Shown: one piece after another, positions 11,590 to 19,230 of the stretch
How the letters are laid out: the number at the start of each line of letters is the position of its first letter
How positions within the stretch are numbered: the stretch's first letter is position 1
Source of the DNA: Fonticula alba ATCC 38817
Lineage: Eukaryota; Protista; Nucleariida
Length of the DNA stretch: 47,432 bases
Assembly: GCA_000388065.2 (NCBI GenBank)
Contig: KB932201.1
Reading direction: 5' to 3' (one strand)
Notes under the pieces: generated by a model
Seen by the model: only the letters and a program-made list of their open reading frames with translations
What the model was told of the DNA's origin: nothing
The model's database searches: none
Program-made: the position numbers and the translations under genes

Positions 11590-14500
11590 ATGACAACCAG
11601 CCGTCCCAGGGCGCGGGCAAATGGCCGCGCCGAGGTAGCCCCCGTGGGCCGGTCCTCCACCCGACAAGACCCGGCGGCGGCAAATGTCAAGCAACGCCAT
11701 GGTAGCACCTCTGACCTGAAGCCTCAGGTCAAGCCAGCCGCCTCGGATGTCACTGCTTCTGCCCCTGCGATTGCGCCCATGGGCGAGAGCTCACGGGCAG
11801 CCGCTGGCCAAACCGGCATCCCCCCGGCCGATCCCCCGGCCACTTTGCGCCTGCGTCTGGCGGTGTACCTGGCGTCGGCCGTGGCGACGGCCCTGCTGCT
11901 GGGCTTCGCCTGGGCTGGCCTGCTGGCAACTCCGGTGGCGGAGGAGCCCCGGCTGCCGGCCAGTCTTCAGCAGTTGTTGGGCCCCGGGCAGACCGGCCCC
12001 GGCCCATTGCTCCAGAAGGTGACGACCGCGGCTCGTTCGGTCCTCGGCCCGTCCGCCATCGACCCATGCAGCTGTGCGATGACCTATTCGCGGCCATCCT
12101 ACCCGCGACTGAATTTGGCCACCATGCCGATCCCCTACGGCCAGAGGCAGGGCAAAAAGGTCCCCCCTCATCCAGGGCGGGGTGTGCTGTTTGCCGAGCG
12201 CACCGAGGCCGACTGGGCGGCAGCCTATCGGGAGGCCAGTCGCTCGGGGCGGTACCAGCTCATTCGCTTTGATGATGCCGGCCGTCCGCCAGCCACCCAC
12301 CTGCCAGTACGTGGGACCGCGGGCTGGATGTTCTCGAGCATGATGTCGCTCTTCCCTTTTTTATCCTGTGCCAAGGTGCACTTTGAGATCAATCCCCCTG
12401 ACCGTCCCCCCTGTCCCCTCCCCCCTCCTCTCCCCAATGTGCTCCGCCCCTTTCCCCTGCGCAGCTCCAGCCGGTCCTCTTCATCGCCGGCTCCGGCGGA
12501 TCCTCCAAACAGGTCCGGTCTTTGGCATCCGTGGCTGCGAGGCATGCACACGGCCTGACCCTGGGCTACAAGGACCCGGAGATGTGGGATCAGTTTGACG
12601 AGTGGGACTTGGCGGACCTCGGCGGTTCGCCGACTGCCTCGCTGGTTTTCTACTCGGTCGAGACCGATGGCGAGATGACGGGGTTCCGCACGGACGACAT
12701 CATGGCCCAGGCGCACTTTGCCAATTACGTTCTCGCCTGGCTGGCGAATCACCATCCGACTGGTGCGCGGCTTCCCCTGGCCCCCATGAGCCACCCATCC
12801 AGCTGAGGCTCTTCCTCGGTGCCGAGTCGTGTCTGACATCCTGTCTGGGATCTTTTTTTTTTTTTTTTTTTTCCTTTGGGTACCCCGCCACCAGCCGATT
12901 CGATCATCCTCATTGGCCATTCGATGGGCGGCATCGTGGCCCGGACCATGCCCCTGCTGGCTAGCCACCCCCCGCGCACGGTCCAGTCGTATGTCACCCT
13001 GGCGACGCCGCATGCCAGCCCCCCGCTGCCGGCCATTTCGCGCACCCTGCACGATCTGTACCAGGCAGTCAACTACCTTTGGGCGGCGGCGCTGGCGACC
13101 CAGGAAGCTGGCTCGACGGCTGCCATGGTGGCCGACAGCCAGGTGGCCGACACGGCCGCAGCCCTGGGCCTGACCCCGGTCACCGACAGTGCCTGGTTCC
13201 GCCAGCATGTGTCTCTGTTGAGCTTGGCCCCGGGCTCGCGCGATCTGCTGGTTGACGGGTCGCTGAACTGGCTTCAGGGGCTCCTCCAGCGGGGCGTCTG
13301 GGTCGACTGGACAGACGCAGAGAACACCCCTGGGGGTCGGGCAGTCCTGTCGCCGGCCACCAATGTCGTGTCCGGCTGGACCACCGGGCTGCCGGGGGTC
13401 AGCACATCGCAAGACCACCAGGTCCGTGGCAGCGCGCGCTAGCTCCACCTGCCGAGTCTGCCTCTCTCCATCGTCCCTCGCCCGCCCCTTCCGTATCTTC
13501 TGCCAGCTAATGCCCCCCTGCCACAATTCATTCATTCCCCTTCCCTCTCTCCTCTCTGGCCGAACTGGCAAGCAGACGATCGTCTGGTGTGCGGAGACCG
13601 TGCGCGCGGTGAATCACATTATTCAGGCGCAATTGCATGCAAACGACGGTCGGGCGGCCATGCTCGACCTGCCCAGGCGCGTGGCCATCACCCGGCAAAT
13701 TGTGAGCCCCTCCTTTTCCCAGCGCTTTGCCCTTCCTCAGGGCTTGAAACTGGGCGCCGAAGACCGGAGGCTCACCCTGCCGACTGTGCCGGCGGTGAGT
13801 CTGGATGCCGGCCGGCCATGCGCCGACACCGAAGTGCTCGTTGACCTGGATCGGCCACTGGTGATTGCCATCTCGGGCCCCGGGGCGCCGGATGCCCGAA
13901 GTGAGCCTCTCTCCCGGGTGGATGTCTTTGCCGACCCGCTGTCGGCCCCGGCGGCCGGCGGCTGGCCGTCTGATCCATTTGCCGTGTGGCTCTGCTCGCA
14001 GGATGACTATCGGGATTTGGTGTCCGGAGGGGGGGATTCGCCGCGGGTTCCCCTGACGGCTCTGACGGCCGGAGGCGCGTGCACGCCGGTTCCGGCTGCC
14101 CACCTGTCCGTTACTCAGCTCACCCGGCGGCAGGTGAGCCTGTCGGTCACGGTGGACTGGCATGCGGTCATCTACCATGGCCGGCCGTATGACGCGGTGG
14201 CCATCCTGGTGCCGGCATCCGGCGGGGCCGCTCGGTGGAGCACGCGCACTTGCCTGTCGGCCCCGGCCGCTGACCGGTCGGTCACGTCTCCCAAGTCGAT
14301 GTCGTTCCAGCTGCTGCTGGCCCGGCGCCAGGTGTCCCTGCCACTGGTCGGCCACACTGTGGTGCTGCCGGTGCCGGTGGTCGGCATCACGATCCCCCTG
14401 CCGGCCGGGTCTCTGGCCTCGGAGCTGGTGCAGCTGCCTGCTTGGACAGGCCTCTCGGCACTCGGCGGGGGGCTCCCTCTTCGGGCGTGTCTCCTCCGGC

Positions 14501-15992
14501 AGGGCACCACCTCGGAAGGCGGGCCTGGCGGCCAGCGTGTTCTCCTGTGGACCCGTGCGCCGGCCAATGACGAGGAGAAGGTCCACGAGCAGGAGGCCCT
14601 GGAGTGCGGCAATGGCGGGGCGGCCATCTTCTCGCACTCCCATGCCGGGGCCATTCGCGAGCCCTCCAGCGCATTGGACTTCGCCACGCTGGCGGACTTT
14701 GGGCTGCACCTTCGCCTGCTTCGAGTCTTCGAGCAGGAGGAAACCAACGAAGCCCGGTCTCCGGTCTTCGGCTCTGGTGGTGAGCCCCTGGCCCTGCGCG
14801 TGTACTGGGACCTGCGAACCTTCTCGGCCCATGCGACGCGTATTGACGCGGCCACCGTGGCCCCGGTGCTGGTCCTCGGGTGGGGGATCCTCTTTATGGT
14901 GCTCGGGTCGAAGCCCAGCCCCGCCGGGGCTGACCATCCGATTGAAGTGTTCATCGGACGCCACGCGTGGCCGCTGGTCGGGGCGATGGCCATCCTGTCG
15001 GCCGCGGCGGCCGCCGTATCGGCCGTGCGTTTGATCACCCCGGCCGATGGGCTGGAGTCCCTGCTGTCCATCAGCGCCGGGGAGGCTCACGCGCTTTTCG
15101 GCATCGCGGTCGAGGCTTTGGCCGTGGCGGCATATCGGCTGACGGCGTCGCTGCTGTTGGCCCATGCCTGTCTCGGGGCTTTCCGTCTGGTGGTCGGCGC
15201 TCTGGCGGCCATCCTTTCGCCCTTCTGGCTGTTGGTGGTGCGGCCCCTTCGGCCGGTGGTCCGCGGTCTCGGAGCCCGTCTCCCCGGGGTTGGGGATGCC
15301 CTCCGTCTGGCAGCCGTCATCTCGGTTGCATCTTTGCTGCCTGGCCACCTGGCGGTGGTTCTGCTCAGCATTGCCCGGCTCTTGGGCCTCGGCCTGGGTC
15401 GCCTATCTGTCATCGGCATGGGGCCCACTTCGCATGCGGTGCGCCCGGGTCCTCCCGCACATCCGCCTCCCACTCGCGGGCCTGCTACTTCGTTATTTGG
15501 TCCCGCCTTGCTGAATGCGCAAGTAACTTACCCCTCTGCTCGCCCTTGCTGGGATTGCCTCGCGCCGCATGACCACCAGCGCCGAACCCATCAGTATAAG
15601 GTGTATCTGTTGTTCGCGTGCCTGATTCCGGTGGCGCTGGCCGCTACGCGGGCCTTTGCCTGGCTTCGCGCCGAGCGGCTGATTGACTGGCCCTTCAGCC
15701 CGGAGTACCGGCCCACGGCGCACCAGCTGGCCGATCTCTGTCCCTCGCCGGAGCACTTGGCCAAGCTGTCGGCGGCTTTGCCCGGGGCGATGGCCATCCC
15801 GGCCGGGTCCCTGAAGACCCTGGCTCAGGCGGTCATGGGGGCCGGGGCCGAAGGCGACGCGCTTGCCGTGGTGCGGGCCATGCATGTGGCCGCTGTGCGG
15901 ACACTGCGCCTGGTTGTGGCCCTCGTGGCCGGGCACCTGCGCTTGGCTGGCTGCCAGCTGGATGAGCCCATCATCCGGGGCGTTGTGTCTCA

Positions 15993-16024
<32 letters not shown>

Positions 16025-16437
16025 CGGCCACCGGCATGGGCCTGCCCCTGGCGAAGAGCCCGGCAGTCGTGGCCCATGCGGCGGATCGCCTTCTGGCGGC
16101 TCTGCGAGTTGAGCGTAGCCCGGTTTTGGTGATGGCCTACGGTCTTCTGTGGCTGGCCGCCGAGCGCATGGGCCGTGCCCTTTTCCCGGATGCCGAGCCA
16201 AGCACTCACGGCGACCCGGGGCTTTCGCCGGCCGACAAGGCTCTGGTGGCCGAGACGCGCCAGCAGGTGGCCATGGCCCTACGGGCTCTCTGCTTGGTGG
16301 GATCATTCAGCTTGCTGGCCGGCGCGGTCGGGGTCCTCGGGCCGGCAATGGCACGCGAGATTGCCTCCTATGCGCCTGCCCTCTTCCTGTCGCTCATGCC
16401 GCTTGCCACCTTCCTGGCCTCGGGGATGGTGGCGTAG
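11590..16437 (+). CDS. PGAP1: GPI inositol-deacylase (PGAP1/Bst1 family) with multi-TM C-terminus
   Basis: N-terminal TM anchor; spliced PVLFIAGSGGSSKQVRSLAS; lipase nucleophile IILIGHSMGGIVAR; YVTLATPH; DHQ|TIVWC; long hydrophobic C-terminal exon ending TAG at 16437. Confidence 0.88.
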
Positions 16438-16620
16438 TCGCCGGGAATGAACGCACAATCGACTGACTGTGCATATGTGTCTAGGTCTATTGGATATGTG
16501 CCGGGGGGGGGGGCGGGAGAGAAAGGAAGGAAGAGGGAAGAGAGATCCACAATGGGGGGAGGGGGGTAGGAGAAGGGAATGCATCCGAAGGGATTTATGT
16601 GTGAAGCATGAAGAAGAGGG

Positions 16621-16684
16621 CTAGTCCTTTCCTCCAACCGTGGCGGCAGCCTCGAGCTCGAGAGACTTGATCAGGAACCTGGTG

Positions 16685-16735
<51 letters not shown>

Positions 16736-18466
16736 TGGGGGGGGGGGGCGGAGATAGAGAAAAGGAGAAGGCAGCATGATGAAGGGTCAGCAACAGGGCG
16801 AGAGCCAAGAGGAGAGAGGGGGGAGATTGGCCCGCCGGGGCTGAGTGTGACAGTGCGCGTACTCATCGAGATCGCCGGAAAGCACCGCATGCACTTGGGA
16901 CGTTTCGTGGTTGGTCCGGTTGTCCTTGATAAGCTGGGCGGCGGGTTGCCGGAATGAAGCGAGCGTCAGGAGAGGGTCTTTTGCCGCCTGCGAGGCATCA
17001 ACAAGGGGACAGAAAGGGAGACCGAGGGGGGAGACCGCGAGTATGGTGGGGTGGTTGAATGTGCCGGGCGAAACGCACTTGATAGGGGTTCAGCACATAG
17101 GAGCGCACTTGGCCACCGAAGGAGTTGGAGGTCATGTCACTCCGGCGGAGGCTCTCCTCCAGACGTCTGGGAGCAAGTGGCACATGGAGCCATTAGCAAG
17201 GGAAGGGACGAAGAGATGCTGGCTTTGAAAGGCCCAAAGAGGGAGCGAGAGGGAGGAGAGAAAGATGGCGCACTTTTTATGCAGGTGCCGCTCGAGCAAT
17301 CGCGCACGCAGCAGAGACAGTGCCAATGCCCGATTCCGATGCTGCGAGCGCTCCTGCTGGATGGTGATGACAATCCCGGTCGGCAGGTGTGTCATGCGGA
17401 CAGCCGACTCGGTCTTGTTGACATGCTGGCCGCCGGCCCCGCGCGAGGTCGTCGTCTCGATGTGTAGATACCGCGCATCGATCGACAGCTCCGGGTCCTC
17501 GTGGCCCCCTTCATCCAGCGAGTGAGGCGCAACCCCGACCGAAGCAAAGCTCGTGTGGCGGCGACCTTCGTCGAAAGGGGAATTCCGCACCAGCCGATGG
17601 ACACCAGCCTCCCCGCGCAACCAACCATATGGGCCGCCCTCGGCATCGGCCCGTTCATCAGCATGAATCAGCAACGTGGCATTGCGTAGGGTGTCGGGCC
17701 GCTCGCCGGGCGCGCTGTCAATCAACTCCTGCCGCAGGCCCCGGGCCGAGGCCCATCCACGATACATGTCCAGCAGCATTTGCGTGAAGGATTGGCTATC
17801 GACACCGCCGTTGCCGGCATTCAGAGACAGGAAACAGCCAGAGGCATCCGCCTCGCCGGAGAAGAGAATCCCCTGCCGAACTCGGCTCAAGGCGCTGTGG
17901 AATGCCTGCGCCCGAGCGTGCAGTTCCATGGACAAAGCCCCCACGGCGGCCACCTCGGCCGCGGCATCCGCCGCATCAGGACGCATGTCGGCATACATGG
18001 CCTGCAGCATGTCGGCAAGCTCGCAAATGTCGGCTCGCTCAGTCAGGAGCTCATCCATGCGCTGGACCATCACGCGGTCTTTGGCCAACTGACGCTCGAG
18101 CTCGATGCGCCGCCGGAGGCCACCGCCGTCCCCGCTGGCCGACAGGCCATCGCCCTCGGCCATGCGGCTGTACGCCAGCTCCAGCTCCTGCTCGTTGGCT
18201 TGCACTCGAAGGCGCAAGATCGGCAAATGGATCAGCCCCGACACCTGGTCAAAGGCCTCTTGCGACTGGGCCTCAAAGGGGGTCAGCTGCTCCAACAGGC
18301 CGGGCAGATCGCCAGACGTGCGCGCGTGCGAGGAAAGCCGGGCCGAAAAAAGGGACACAATCCCCCGGCCTGGAGGATCGGTCGACAAGGGAGCCGCAGT
18401 CGGCCTGATGGCCACCATGCGGGCCCGAGTGACGGCGAGAAGGCCCGTACGCAATGCCACGAGCAT
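16621..18466 (-). CDS. prfB: Class-I peptide chain release factor 2 (PrfB-type), probably mitochondrion-targeted; 4 exons, 469 aa
   Basis: Exons 18466-17274, 17166-17079, 16933-16863 and 16678-16621 (1410 nt, phases consistent). Motifs: GWLRGEAGVHRLVRNSPFDEGRRHTSFASV, SRGAGGQHVNKTESAVRMTHLPTG, QERSQHRNR and FGGQVRSYVLNPYQLIKDNRT...GDLDEFL. The N-terminus is Arg/Ala/Leu-rich and poor in acidic residues. Start Met is inferred. Confidence 0.9.
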
Positions 18467-19230
18467 ATGTGTAGGATAGATGGACGTCGAGAAGGGGGAA
18501 GAGGATCTTGTGTAACCGGGTGCACACGTGCCTTCGCACGCAGGAGAGGTGAGCAGGTGGAGGGAGAGGGGGGGGGGGGCAGGGGGCTCGGCTGCACTCA
18601 AAGTGACTTCCTTCATCTTCAGGCTCTCTGGAAGAAAAGCCTCCCCCTCCCCCCGCCCCGTCGCCCCTTGCGGCAATCTCTGGTCGGGTCCACGATGCCG
18701 GGCGGCCGGCCGACGAGTGCCCCGATCGCGGCGATTCCGTTGGCATGCGGGGGATTGTGGACATTTCCAGGCTCCCGCTGGAACTGCTTCGCATGCTGTG
18801 TCGCGTGTCTGTGTGTGTACCTGTGTGTGCACNNNNNNNNNNGGGGGGGGGGACGCTTGTGTCCGGGCGGTTTCCACTCCACACCAGCCGCACCCCCCAA
18901 GTCAAGGTCTGTGGTTTCGCACCCGGCCTCCTTGTCCGCGAGGGGTGGCTCCCTCGGGGGGAGGGGGGAAACGAAAAAAGCACCGGCCATCGGAACGAGA
19001 ACACCGGGGAAGATGGCACCTGCCGGGGCTCCGCTCGCACACCCGCACACCCACGCCCGCGTCCTCTTTCCCTGCCATCCCTCCCTTCCCCTGTCCCTTG
19101 TGTCCCCCTTTGCCCTCCGCGCGAGCGCCGCGCAAGGACACCCGGCGCCGTGGCTCTCGGTTGTTCCATTCAGCCTCCCTTCCCCTCCCTTTCCCGCCCG
19201 CCTGCCCTTCACAACGGCGCCAGCATATCC

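What the first reader, a model, noticed from the sequence alone, without database searches (positions are those of the whole stretch)
16621..18466. Nuclear, intron-containing RF2 (SPF-type, UAA/UGA-reading) in an apparent opisthokont-like genome
The spliced protein carries SPF (17573-17581), GGQ (17426-17434) and the RF2-type C-terminal xGxQIRSYVL..Y..KD.RT pattern, plus a presequence-like N-terminus. RF1 uses PxT for UAA/UAG and RF2 uses SPF for UAA/UGA. Animal and yeast mitochondria have no RF2, and organellar RF2 is known mainly from plants and some protists. Three spliceosomal introns rule out bacterial contamination. This is either a retained ancestral mitochondrial RF2, predicting UGA as a real stop in this organism's mtDNA, or a horizontal acquisition. 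The loop SPFDEGRRHTSF appears one residue shorter than E. coli SPFDSGGRRHTSF, and the usual AGxGGTEA reads AGNGGVDS, so specificity may be modified.
Basis: partly seen in the sequence, partly recalled or inferred. Interest (0 to 1): 0.75.

Follow-up and report, generated by a model that had tools for sequence, protein, structure and literature searches.

The report
Mitochondrial RF2 gene of Fonticula alba
This is a real, expressed nuclear gene of the slime-mould-like amoeba Fonticula alba for the mitochondrial release factor that reads the stop codons UAA and UGA; it was inherited from the mitochondrial ancestor, several early-branching fungi have it too, and it fits a mitochondrial genome that never uses UGA for tryptophan.

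Summary
On the minus strand, 18466..16621, lies a four-exon gene. It equals Fonticula alba H696_00100 (469 aa), so the host is an opisthokont of the fungal side. All three GT..AG introns are seen spliced out in public transcript contigs. The protein has PCRF and RF-1 domains, SPF and GGQ, and matches RF2 better than RF1.

The mitochondrial DNA of the same assembly has 0 TGA against 65 TGG in 3,910 codons of 11 conserved genes, and one trnW with anticodon CCA. UGA is therefore not tryptophan. TGA ends only four non-conserved ORFs.

The protein falls in the eukaryotic mitochondrial RF2 (mtRF2a) clade, which is sister to alphaproteobacterial RF2. Two of its three introns sit at the same position and phase as in fungal orthologues, and one also as in Dictyostelium. 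This supports vertical inheritance over horizontal transfer.

The gene is not unique among opisthokonts. Orthologues exist in Calcarisporiella, Funneliformis, Paraphysoderma, Gorgonomyces and Amoeboaphelidium. The 2012 inference that it was lost at the root of opisthokonts is outdated.

The codon-reading loop, one residue shorter than usual, is real and rare, but I found no sign of altered stop codons. It is a new member of a known family, of moderate interest.

The parts
17274..18466 (-). Exon 1 (codons 1-397 plus two bases of codon 398). It holds the start ATG at 18466-18464, the N-terminal extension, the PCRF domain and most of the RF-1 domain.
   Evidence: Translation; Pfam PCRF and RF-1; identical to P0001; covered by transcript contigs from 17274 up to 18559.
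18335..18466 (-). Presumed mitochondrial presequence (about residues 1-44). It is rich in Arg, Ala, Leu, Ser and Thr, has no acidic residue before D30, and has a possible R-2 cleavage site at SAR-L|S.
   Evidence: Composition count. The bacterial RF2 alignment only starts at residue 136, giving an extension of roughly 85 residues. Targeting is inferred, not predicted by a tool.
17795..17818 (-). AGNGGVDS (A217-S224), the tip of the helix that reads the first stop-codon base in RF2. The usual sequence is AGAGGTE[AS].
   Evidence: The Asn is unique among the sequences compared. The V-D-S ending is also found in Calcarisporiella, and D in place of E is common.
17546..17581 (-). Codon-recognition loop SPFDEGRRHTSF (S296-F307), holding the SPF tripeptide at 17573-17581. 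It is one residue shorter than in nearly all RF2.
   Evidence: 117 of 118 located loops are one residue longer; the 118th is Fonticula itself. One search shows that only P0240 shares the short form.
17426..17434 (-). GGQ motif (G345-Q347), the catalytic motif for peptidyl-tRNA hydrolysis.
17167..17273 (-). Intron 1 (107 nt, GT..AG, phase 2 in codon 398).
   Evidence: Spliced contig in run X2. The alignment column and phase match introns of Calcarisporiella, Funneliformis, Paraphysoderma and Dictyostelium mtRF2a genes.
17079..17166 (-). Exon 2 (88 nt), coding K398 to Q427 including GGQVRSYVLNPYQ.
   Evidence: The orthologous exon is also 88 nt in Calcarisporiella and Funneliformis.
16934..17078 (-). 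Intron 2 (145 nt, GT..AG, phase 0 after Q427).
   Evidence: Spliced contig in run X2. Same position and phase as in Calcarisporiella and Funneliformis.
16863..16933 (-). Exon 3 (71 nt), coding LIKDNRTNHETSQVHAVLSGDLD and two bases of E451.
16679..16862 (-). Intron 3 (184 nt, GT..AG, phase 2 in codon 451). It contains a (CT)n run at 16687-16730 and is private to Fonticula among the genes compared.
   Evidence: Contig record 14 of run X3 joins 16676 to 16861, the same junction within a 2-nt ambiguity..
16621..16678 (-). Exon 4 coding part, ending in the stop TAG at 16621-16623. The 3' UTR continues at least to 16533.

Best explanation
This is the nuclear gene for the mitochondrial class I release factor 2 (mtRF2a) of Fonticula alba. 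It was inherited vertically from the alphaproteobacterial ancestor of mitochondria.

Inferred mechanism: the precursor is imported into mitochondria through its N-terminal presequence. On the mitoribosome it recognises UAA and UGA in the A site, using the SPF loop, the following His-Thr and the helix tip AGNGGVDS. Its GGQ motif then triggers hydrolysis of the peptidyl-tRNA. It works beside an mtRF1a (PQT motif) that reads UAA and UAG.

Its retention goes with a mitochondrial code in which UGA was never reassigned to tryptophan. Conserved genes end in TAA or TAG, and TGA closes only a few non-conserved ORFs.

What is shown: gene structure, expression, family membership, the state of the mitochondrial code, and shared introns. 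What is inferred: import, UGA-dependent release, and real use of UGA as a stop.
For: - **Identity and host:** the gene is 100% identical to Fonticula alba H696_00100.
- **Splicing and expression:**
- **Family:** PCRF and RF-1 domains with SPF and GGQ. prfB scores 229 bits against 141 for prfA. E. coli RF2 structures match at 6e-49.
- **Family inventory:** the genome has only two PCRF genes, and the other carries PQT and GGQ, so it is RF1-type. There is also one RF-1-only gene.
- **Mitochondrial code:** the mtDNA contigs C211-C214 have 0 TGA, 65 TGG, 323 TTA and 74 TCA in 3,910 codons of 11 conserved genes, even though TGA is commoner than TGG across all frames. There is a single trnW with anticodon CCA. 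Four distinct orphan ORFs of 150 aa or more end in TGA.
- **Tree:** in the IQ-TREE PMSF tree the protein lies in a 39-row eukaryotic clade (support 90/97). Named members are Cyanidioschyzon 'mitochondrial RF-2', Vischeria 'mitochondrial RF2', Dictyostelium, Phytophthora, Diphylleia, land plants and five Holomycota. That clade is sister to alphaproteobacterial RF2.
- **Grouping with fungi:** holding Fonticula together with the fungal and aphelid clade gives a slightly better likelihood (p-AU 0.63).
- **Introns:** introns 1 and 2 share column and phase with fungal genes, and intron 1 also with Dictyostelium. The exon between them is 88 nt in all three Holomycota genes that have both introns.
- **Base composition:** the CDS GC of 64% equals that of the surrounding genome.
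Against: - No conserved mitochondrial gene ends in TGA, so the need for RF2 rests on ORFs of unknown function. Two of these belong to a decaying multicopy cassette.
- The protein tree alone cannot exclude a position next to the alphaproteobacteria (p-AU 0.28), and the backbone of the eukaryotic clade is unresolved.
- The protein is divergent, with an end branch of 1.2 changes per site, and it falls below the NCBIfam prfB cut-off (229 bits for exon 1 against 370).
- Mitochondrial targeting was judged from composition only.
- The one-residue deletion lies in the loop between the parts that read the second and third stop-codon bases, so normal specificity is assumed, not shown.
Confidence: 0.8

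Rival explanations
1. The gene is a genuine, vertically inherited mtRF2a, but UGA is effectively unused in Fonticula mitochondria. The factor would then be kept only as a second reader of UAA or for some other role. This would be 'RF2 without UGA', as reported for Naegleria gruberi and some dictyostelids.
For: All 11 conserved genes end in TAA (9) or TAG (2), and none ends in TGA. Duarte et al. 2012 document such cases. The long branch and unusual motif residues could reflect relaxed constraint.
Against: Four distinct ORFs of 190-731 aa run open up to a TGA. They contain no internal TGA, although TGA is the commoner triplet genome-wide. SPF, RRHTSF and GGQ are intact and the gene is expressed.
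Confidence: 0.12
2. The gene was acquired horizontally from an alphaproteobacterium in the Fonticula lineage. It later gained introns and a presequence, independently of the mtRF2a of other eukaryotes.
For: The best word-search hits are alphaproteobacterial RF2 at about 50% identity. The AU test does not reject holding Fonticula and P0240 with the alphaproteobacterial clade (lnL 6.9 lower, p 0.28). The 2012 survey inferred loss at the root of opisthokonts.
Against: Two of the three introns share position and phase with fungal orthologues and one with Dictyostelium, and the exon between them is the same 88 nt. The free tree puts the protein in the eukaryotic clade (90/97), and joining it to the Holomycota clade costs nothing. 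Five other Holomycota lineages carry the gene in nuclear contexts. GC content matches the host.
Confidence: 0.04
3. The factor has changed decoding properties because of the one-residue deletion in the SPF...RRHTSF loop and the Asn in AGNGGVDS. It might read UGA more weakly, or read a wider set of codons.
For: The deletion is absent from 117 of the 118 word-search sequences whose loop could be located (the 118th is Fonticula itself) and from every other mtRF2a-clade and bacterial sequence whose loop could be located; only one unidentified eukaryote shares it. Changes and deletions in this same region have been proposed to alter the specificity of labyrinthulean mtRF2a and of a dinoflagellate plastid RF2.
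Against: The conserved genes show no unusual codon gaps. TTA, TCA and all other sense codons except CGC and CGG are used. ORF lengths are typical, and the genes end in standard stops. Ser, Pro, Phe, His and Thr of the recognition set are all intact.
Confidence: 0.04

Closest known systems
Eukaryotic mitochondrial release factor mtRF2a (Arabidopsis At1g56350 type; Duarte et al. 2012, PMC3472500)
   Same: Nuclear-encoded, with an N-terminal extension, PCRF and RF-1 domains, SPF and GGQ. It falls in the same clade, sister to alphaproteobacterial RF2, and goes with a mitochondrial code in which UGA is not a sense codon.
   Different: The host is an opisthokont, a group for which that survey inferred loss. 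The recognition loop is one residue shorter and the helix tip has Asn in AGNGGVDS.
mtRF2a orthologues of early-diverging Holomycota: Calcarisporiella thermophila XP_069251358.1, Funneliformis geosporum CAI2168635.1, Paraphysoderma sedebokerense KAI9145981.1, Gorgonomyces haynaldii KAI8913337.1, Amoeboaphelidium occidentale KAI3661998.1
   Same: They belong to the same eukaryotic clade, and monophyly with Fonticula is not rejected and is slightly favoured. Introns are shared at codon 398 phase 2 and after Q427 phase 0, with the same 88-nt exon. All sit in nuclear contexts.
   Different: They keep the normal 13-residue loop (SPFDxxxRRHTSF or SPFDxxxKRHTSF). They lack Fonticula's intron 3 and have other introns of their own. 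Identity to Fonticula is only about 45%.
Bacterial RF2 (prfB), e.g. the E. coli RF2 structures 1GQE and 6OT3
   Same: The domain order and the catalytic and recognition motifs match. The alignment covers residues 136-398 of exon 1 at E = 6e-49. The ESM Atlas model superposes on a bacterial RF2 cluster with TM 0.71/0.90.
   Different: There is no programmed +1 frameshift (one continuous frame in exon 1). It has spliceosomal introns, an N-terminal extension of about 85 residues, and a loop one residue shorter.
Organellar RF2 with altered codon-binding regions (labyrinthulean mtRF2a; pedinophyte-derived dinoflagellate plastid pRF2; PMC12574857)
   Same: The change lies in the same codon-binding region, and deletions there have been linked to new stop codons.
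   Different: Fonticula keeps the invariant Ser of SPF, and its mtDNA shows no sign of extra stop codons (TTA 323, TCA 74 in conserved genes).

Membership tests
Class I bacterial-type release factor, RF2 subtype (prfB / mtRF2a) | PCRF domain followed by RF-1 domain | tested here: met
   Pfam PF03462 at 6e-30 and PF00472 at 2e-27 on exon 1 alone.
Class I bacterial-type release factor, RF2 subtype (prfB / mtRF2a) | SPF tripeptide (not PxT) in the codon-recognition loop, followed by RRHTSF | tested here: met
   S296-P297-F298 and RRHTSF are present. The spacer is one residue shorter than usual.
Class I bacterial-type release factor, RF2 subtype (prfB / mtRF2a) | GGQ catalytic motif | tested here: met
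   G345-G346-Q347.
Class I bacterial-type release factor, RF2 subtype (prfB / mtRF2a) | Scores as RF2 rather than RF1, RF-H or ArfB with curated profiles | tested here: inconclusive
   TIGR00020 prfB scores 228.8 bits, against 155.5 and 140.7 for the two prfA models and 101 for prfH, so RF2 is clearly best. The score is below the curated cut-off of 370. Only exon 1 (398 of 469 aa) was scanned and the protein is divergent.
Eukaryotic mitochondrial mtRF2a | Branches with other eukaryotic mitochondrial RF2, sister to alphaproteobacteria | tested here: met
   The eukaryotic clade has support 90/97 and is sister to an alphaproteobacterial clade with 100/98. The AU test cannot reject the alternative beside the alphaproteobacteria (p 0.28).
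Eukaryotic mitochondrial mtRF2a | Nuclear gene with spliceosomal introns, at positions shared with orthologues | tested here: met
   Three GT..AG introns are spliced in transcript contigs. Two are shared in position and phase with fungal genes, and one also with Dictyostelium.
Eukaryotic mitochondrial mtRF2a | Mitochondrial targeting | not testable with these tools
   There is only a presequence-like composition (no acidic residue in the first 29, 4 Arg, rich in A/L/S/T) and an extension of about 85 residues over bacterial RF2. No TargetP or MitoFates was available.
Eukaryotic mitochondrial mtRF2a | Host mtDNA does not use UGA as a sense codon and uses it as a stop | tested here: met
   UGA is not a sense codon: 0 TGA against 65 TGG in 3,910 conserved codons, and trnW has anticodon CCA. 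Its use as a stop is only in four orphan ORFs, so that half is weaker.
Eukaryotic mitochondrial mtRF2a | Peptide release at UAA and UGA on mitoribosomes | not testable with these tools
   This needs a biochemical assay or complementation.

The most novel reading that the evidence does not exclude
The one-residue deletion between SPF and RRHTSF is shared only with the RF2 of an unidentified GC-rich eukaryote (P0240, Logan DRR659772). It could mark a small lineage whose mitochondrial RF2 reads stop codons differently, for instance with weakened UGA recognition. That would be a step toward losing UGA as a stop, caught before the factor itself is lost.
Probability: 0.08. Interest if true: 0.6.

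Novelty: new member of a known kind. Interest (0 to 1): 0.35.

Why it matters
The standard survey of organellar release factors (Duarte et al. 2012) states that mtRF2a is absent from animals and fungi and was lost, together with UGA stops, at the root of opisthokonts.

Fonticula carries a vertically inherited, expressed mtRF2a. The orthologues found here in a chytrid, a blastoclad, a glomeromycete, a mucoromycete and an aphelid show that the opisthokont ancestor still had RF2 and an unreassigned UGA. The UGA-to-Trp change and the loss of RF2 must therefore have happened several times, separately in the animal line and within fungi.

This refines a textbook example of co-evolution between a genetic code and its release factors. 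It also gives a tractable case, Fonticula, where UGA is almost but not quite out of use. It does not reveal a new kind of system.

Tried and rejected
- **Word search:** it listed only bacterial RF2 apart from the self-hit, so it could not place the gene among eukaryotes. Its best non-self hit, P0002, is a duplicated chimeric bacterial sequence.
- **The search for related loci on genome contigs:** one back-translated peptide biased it towards Pelagibacter. I did not use it for phylogeny.
- **ESM Atlas feature search:** it does not separate RF1 from RF2 clusters, so it served only as a fold check.
- **Pfam on 20 mitochondrial ORFs:** the TGA-ended ORFs stayed unnamed.
- **Source of P0240:** its 514-aa neighbour has no match in Fonticula, and its PSF1 neighbour matches only weakly. 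It is not a close relative and remains unidentified.
- **Paper searches:** searches for Fonticula plus release factor, and for mtRF2 in fungi or opisthokonts, found nothing beyond Duarte 2012. A search for the zygomycete mitochondrial-code paper found nothing in the library.
- **AU test of the horizontal-transfer placement:** it was not decisive.
- **Rejected readings:** bacterial contamination (introns, host GC, spliced transcripts); an RF1, ICT1 or C12orf65 identity; a pseudogene (intact frame and motifs, expressed).

Full report
**What is there**

The minus strand of 16621-18466 carries a four-exon gene. Reading the sequence gives this coding sequence: 18466..17274, 17166..17079, 16933..16863 and 16678..16621. 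That is 1,410 nt, or 469 codons plus TAG. The three GT..AG introns are 107, 145 and 184 nt long and pyrimidine-rich on the gene strand.

A script that threads the database protein onto the DNA reproduces exactly these exons. The word search with exon 1 returned a 100% match, P0001, named 'hypothetical protein H696_00100 [Fonticula alba]', 469 aa. The host is therefore Fonticula alba, a cellular slime mould on the fungal side of the opisthokonts. The gene is already in the public annotation as an unnamed release-factor-domain protein.

**Expression and splicing**

Contigs from four small public runs of 2012 lie on the exons only. One contig of run X2 skips 16934-17078 and 17167-17273. One contig of run X3 joins 16676 to 16861, which is intron 3 within a 2-nt ambiguity. 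These runs therefore hold spliced RNA, and all three introns are confirmed.

Coverage reaches 18559 upstream and 16533 downstream. The ATG at 18466 is the first ATG in the covered 5' part.

**Family**

- Exon 1 alone matches Pfam PCRF (6e-30) and RF-1 (2e-27).
- NCBIfam prfB scores 229 bits. The two prfA models score 156 and 141, and prfH scores 101. The prfB score is below the curated cut-off of 370.
- The best solved relatives are E. coli RF2 chains (6e-49). RF1 chains follow at 1e-31, and C12orf65 is far behind.
- The whole genome has only two PCRF genes. The other, at C1:2948573-2949451, carries PQT and GGQ and is RF1-type. There is also one RF-1-only gene on contig C8.

Fonticula thus has the full ancestral pair of mtRF1a and mtRF2a.

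The assembly holds mitochondrial DNA on contigs C211-C214 (45.2, 18.0, 5.8 and 10.8 kb, GC 28-30%).

- Eleven conserved genes were examined: cox1-3, cob, nad1, nad3, nad4, nad5, a probable nad2, atp6 and rps12. From the first ATG of each they contain 0 TGA and 65 TGG in 3,910 codons.
- A-ending codons are otherwise preferred (TTA 323 against TTG 109; AAA 102 against AAG 28). TGA is also commoner than TGG over all frames (1,026 against 744).
- The only trnW has anticodon CCA.

UGA is therefore not tryptophan. Nine of the eleven genes end in TAA and two in TAG.

TGA closes four distinct ORFs of 190-731 aa. None has a Pfam match, and two are copies of a repeated cassette. In each, TGA lies a few codons before the next TAA or TAG. 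Duarte et al. read the same pattern as true UGA stops in Polysphondylium.

No other codon looks like an added stop. Only CGC and CGG are unused.

**Origin**

The exhaustive representative search returned many long proteins. In a FastTree of 160 rows, and then in an IQ-TREE PMSF tree of 74 rows, Fonticula falls in a clade of 39 rows (ultrafast bootstrap 90, SH-aLRT 97). This clade is sister to an alphaproteobacterial clade (100/98).

Cluster look-ups name these members of the eukaryotic clade:

- Cyanidioschyzon 'mitochondrial peptide chain release factor RF-2'
- Galdieria
- Vischeria 'mitochondrial peptide chain release factor 2'
- Phytophthora
- Diphylleia
- Dictyostelium
- Phalansterium
- Selaginella
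- Colocasia

The clade also contains a well-supported group (99/99) of Holomycota:

- Calcarisporiella
- Funneliformis
- Paraphysoderma
- Gorgonomyces
- Amoeboaphelidium

These fungal genes lie between ordinary nuclear genes.

The backbone of the eukaryotic clade is unresolved. Holding Fonticula and its sister P0240 together with the Holomycota group gives a log-likelihood 2.8 higher than the free search (p-AU 0.63). Holding them with the alphaproteobacteria costs 6.9 log-likelihood units but is not rejected (p 0.28). The protein tree favours vertical descent without proving it.

**Introns settle the origin**

I threaded each protein onto its genomic locus and mapped the introns onto one alignment.

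| Fonticula intron | Position and phase | Same column and phase in |
|---|---|---|
| 1 | codon 398, phase 2 | Calcarisporiella, Funneliformis, Paraphysoderma, and the single intron of Dictyostelium |
| 2 | phase 0, after ...NPYQ | Calcarisporiella, Funneliformis |
| 3 | codon 451, phase 2 | none (private) |

The exon between introns 1 and 2 is 88 nt in Fonticula, Calcarisporiella and Funneliformis. Two exact matches out of three introns are very unlikely for a gene that entered from a bacterium independently. My rough estimate of the chance is of the order of 1e-4, and still below 0.01 after allowing for preferred insertion sites.

The coding GC of 64% also equals that of the surrounding genome.

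**The unusual residues**

The loop SPFDEGRRHTSF is one residue shorter than in 117 of the 118 word-search sequences in which the loop motif could be located (the 118th is Fonticula itself). It is also shorter than in every other mtRF2a-clade and bacterial sequence compared whose loop could be located. The one exception is P0240 (SPYDKDRRHTSF), its sister in the tree (97/90).

P0240 comes from an unidentified, GC-rich (64-68%), intron-poor eukaryote in a Logan assembly. It is not a close relative of Fonticula.

AGNGGVDS differs from other sequences only by its Asn. The V-D-S ending occurs in Calcarisporiella, and Asp in place of Glu is frequent.

Changes in this region have been proposed to alter specificity in other organellar RF2. 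Here nothing in the mitochondrial codon usage points to that.

**Comparison with what is known**

Duarte et al. [quoted passage not shown] The data here contradict that inference for Holomycota.

I found no paper in the searchable library that mentions a release factor in Fonticula, or mtRF2 in fungi beyond that survey. The library is incomplete, so this is not proof that nobody has noted it.

The family, its mechanism and its link to the UGA codon are well known. Fonticula is a new member in an unexpected but not unique place.

**Verdict**

The reading 'retained ancestral mitochondrial RF2, UGA not Trp' is supported. Horizontal transfer is disfavoured, and altered specificity is unsupported.

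Import into mitochondria, release activity and real use of UGA as a stop remain inferred.

Following the operators' note, I searched exon 1 by reference and used the database protein P0001 for the full length, not a sequence joined by me.

Noticed in passing
L084:670-1728 (protein P0240; Logan assembly of run DRR659772): This is an intronless RF2 gene of an unidentified eukaryote with 64-68% GC, lying between a GINS PSF1 gene and a TIG-domain gene. It is the only other RF2 seen with the one-residue-shorter loop (SPYDKDRRHTSF), and it reads KPGGQ where others read GAGGQ. It is sister to Fonticula in the tree (97/90) but only 41% identical.
   Followed up: partly
G000 contigs C211-C214 (loci L004-L013): The Fonticula mtDNA is split over four contigs with large repeats. 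The last 3 kb of C211 and C212 are identical, a tRNA cluster (His-Gln-Tyr-Lys-Leu-Met) occurs twice in C211, most of it recurs in C212, and part of cox1 is duplicated next to a 2.2-kb N gap. Many long ORFs have no Pfam match, including a 731-aa ORF at the shared contig end that stops at TGA.
   Followed up: partly
L091 (Dictyostelium citrinum), L085, L087, L089 against window 17167-17273: The phase-2 intron just after the RF-1 domain helix (alignment column 432) is shared by Fonticula, three fungi and Dictyostelium. It probably dates back at least to the common ancestor of Amoebozoa and opisthokonts.
   Followed up: yes
G000:C1:2948573-2949451 (L001 1531-2502): This is the partner mtRF1a-type gene (PQT and GGQ). 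Its conserved part lies in a single 323-aa ORF, so that part has no intron, unlike the RF2 gene.
   Followed up: partly
protein P0136 / P0291 (Selaginella moellendorffii): NCBI names these proteins 'PrfB2, chloroplastic', yet they branch in the mitochondrial mtRF2a clade with other land-plant sequences. The name may be a mis-assignment.
   Followed up: no
protein P0002 (ENA contig of 1,537 nt): The best non-self hit of the word search is a bacterial RF2 in which the SPF-to-GGQ segment occurs twice in tandem. It is probably an assembly chimera.
   Followed up: no
window 16687-16730 and 18833-18842: Intron 3 contains a 44-nt CT repeat on the gene strand. A 10-N assembly gap lies about 370 nt upstream of the start codon, beyond the covered 5' UTR.
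   Followed up: no
window 16400-16466: Transcript contigs with four- to five-fold higher depth than the RF2 contigs end here. They belong to the convergent neighbour gene, whose long ORF is 13363-16437 on the plus strand. The two genes' 3' ends lie less than 100 nt apart.
   Followed up: no
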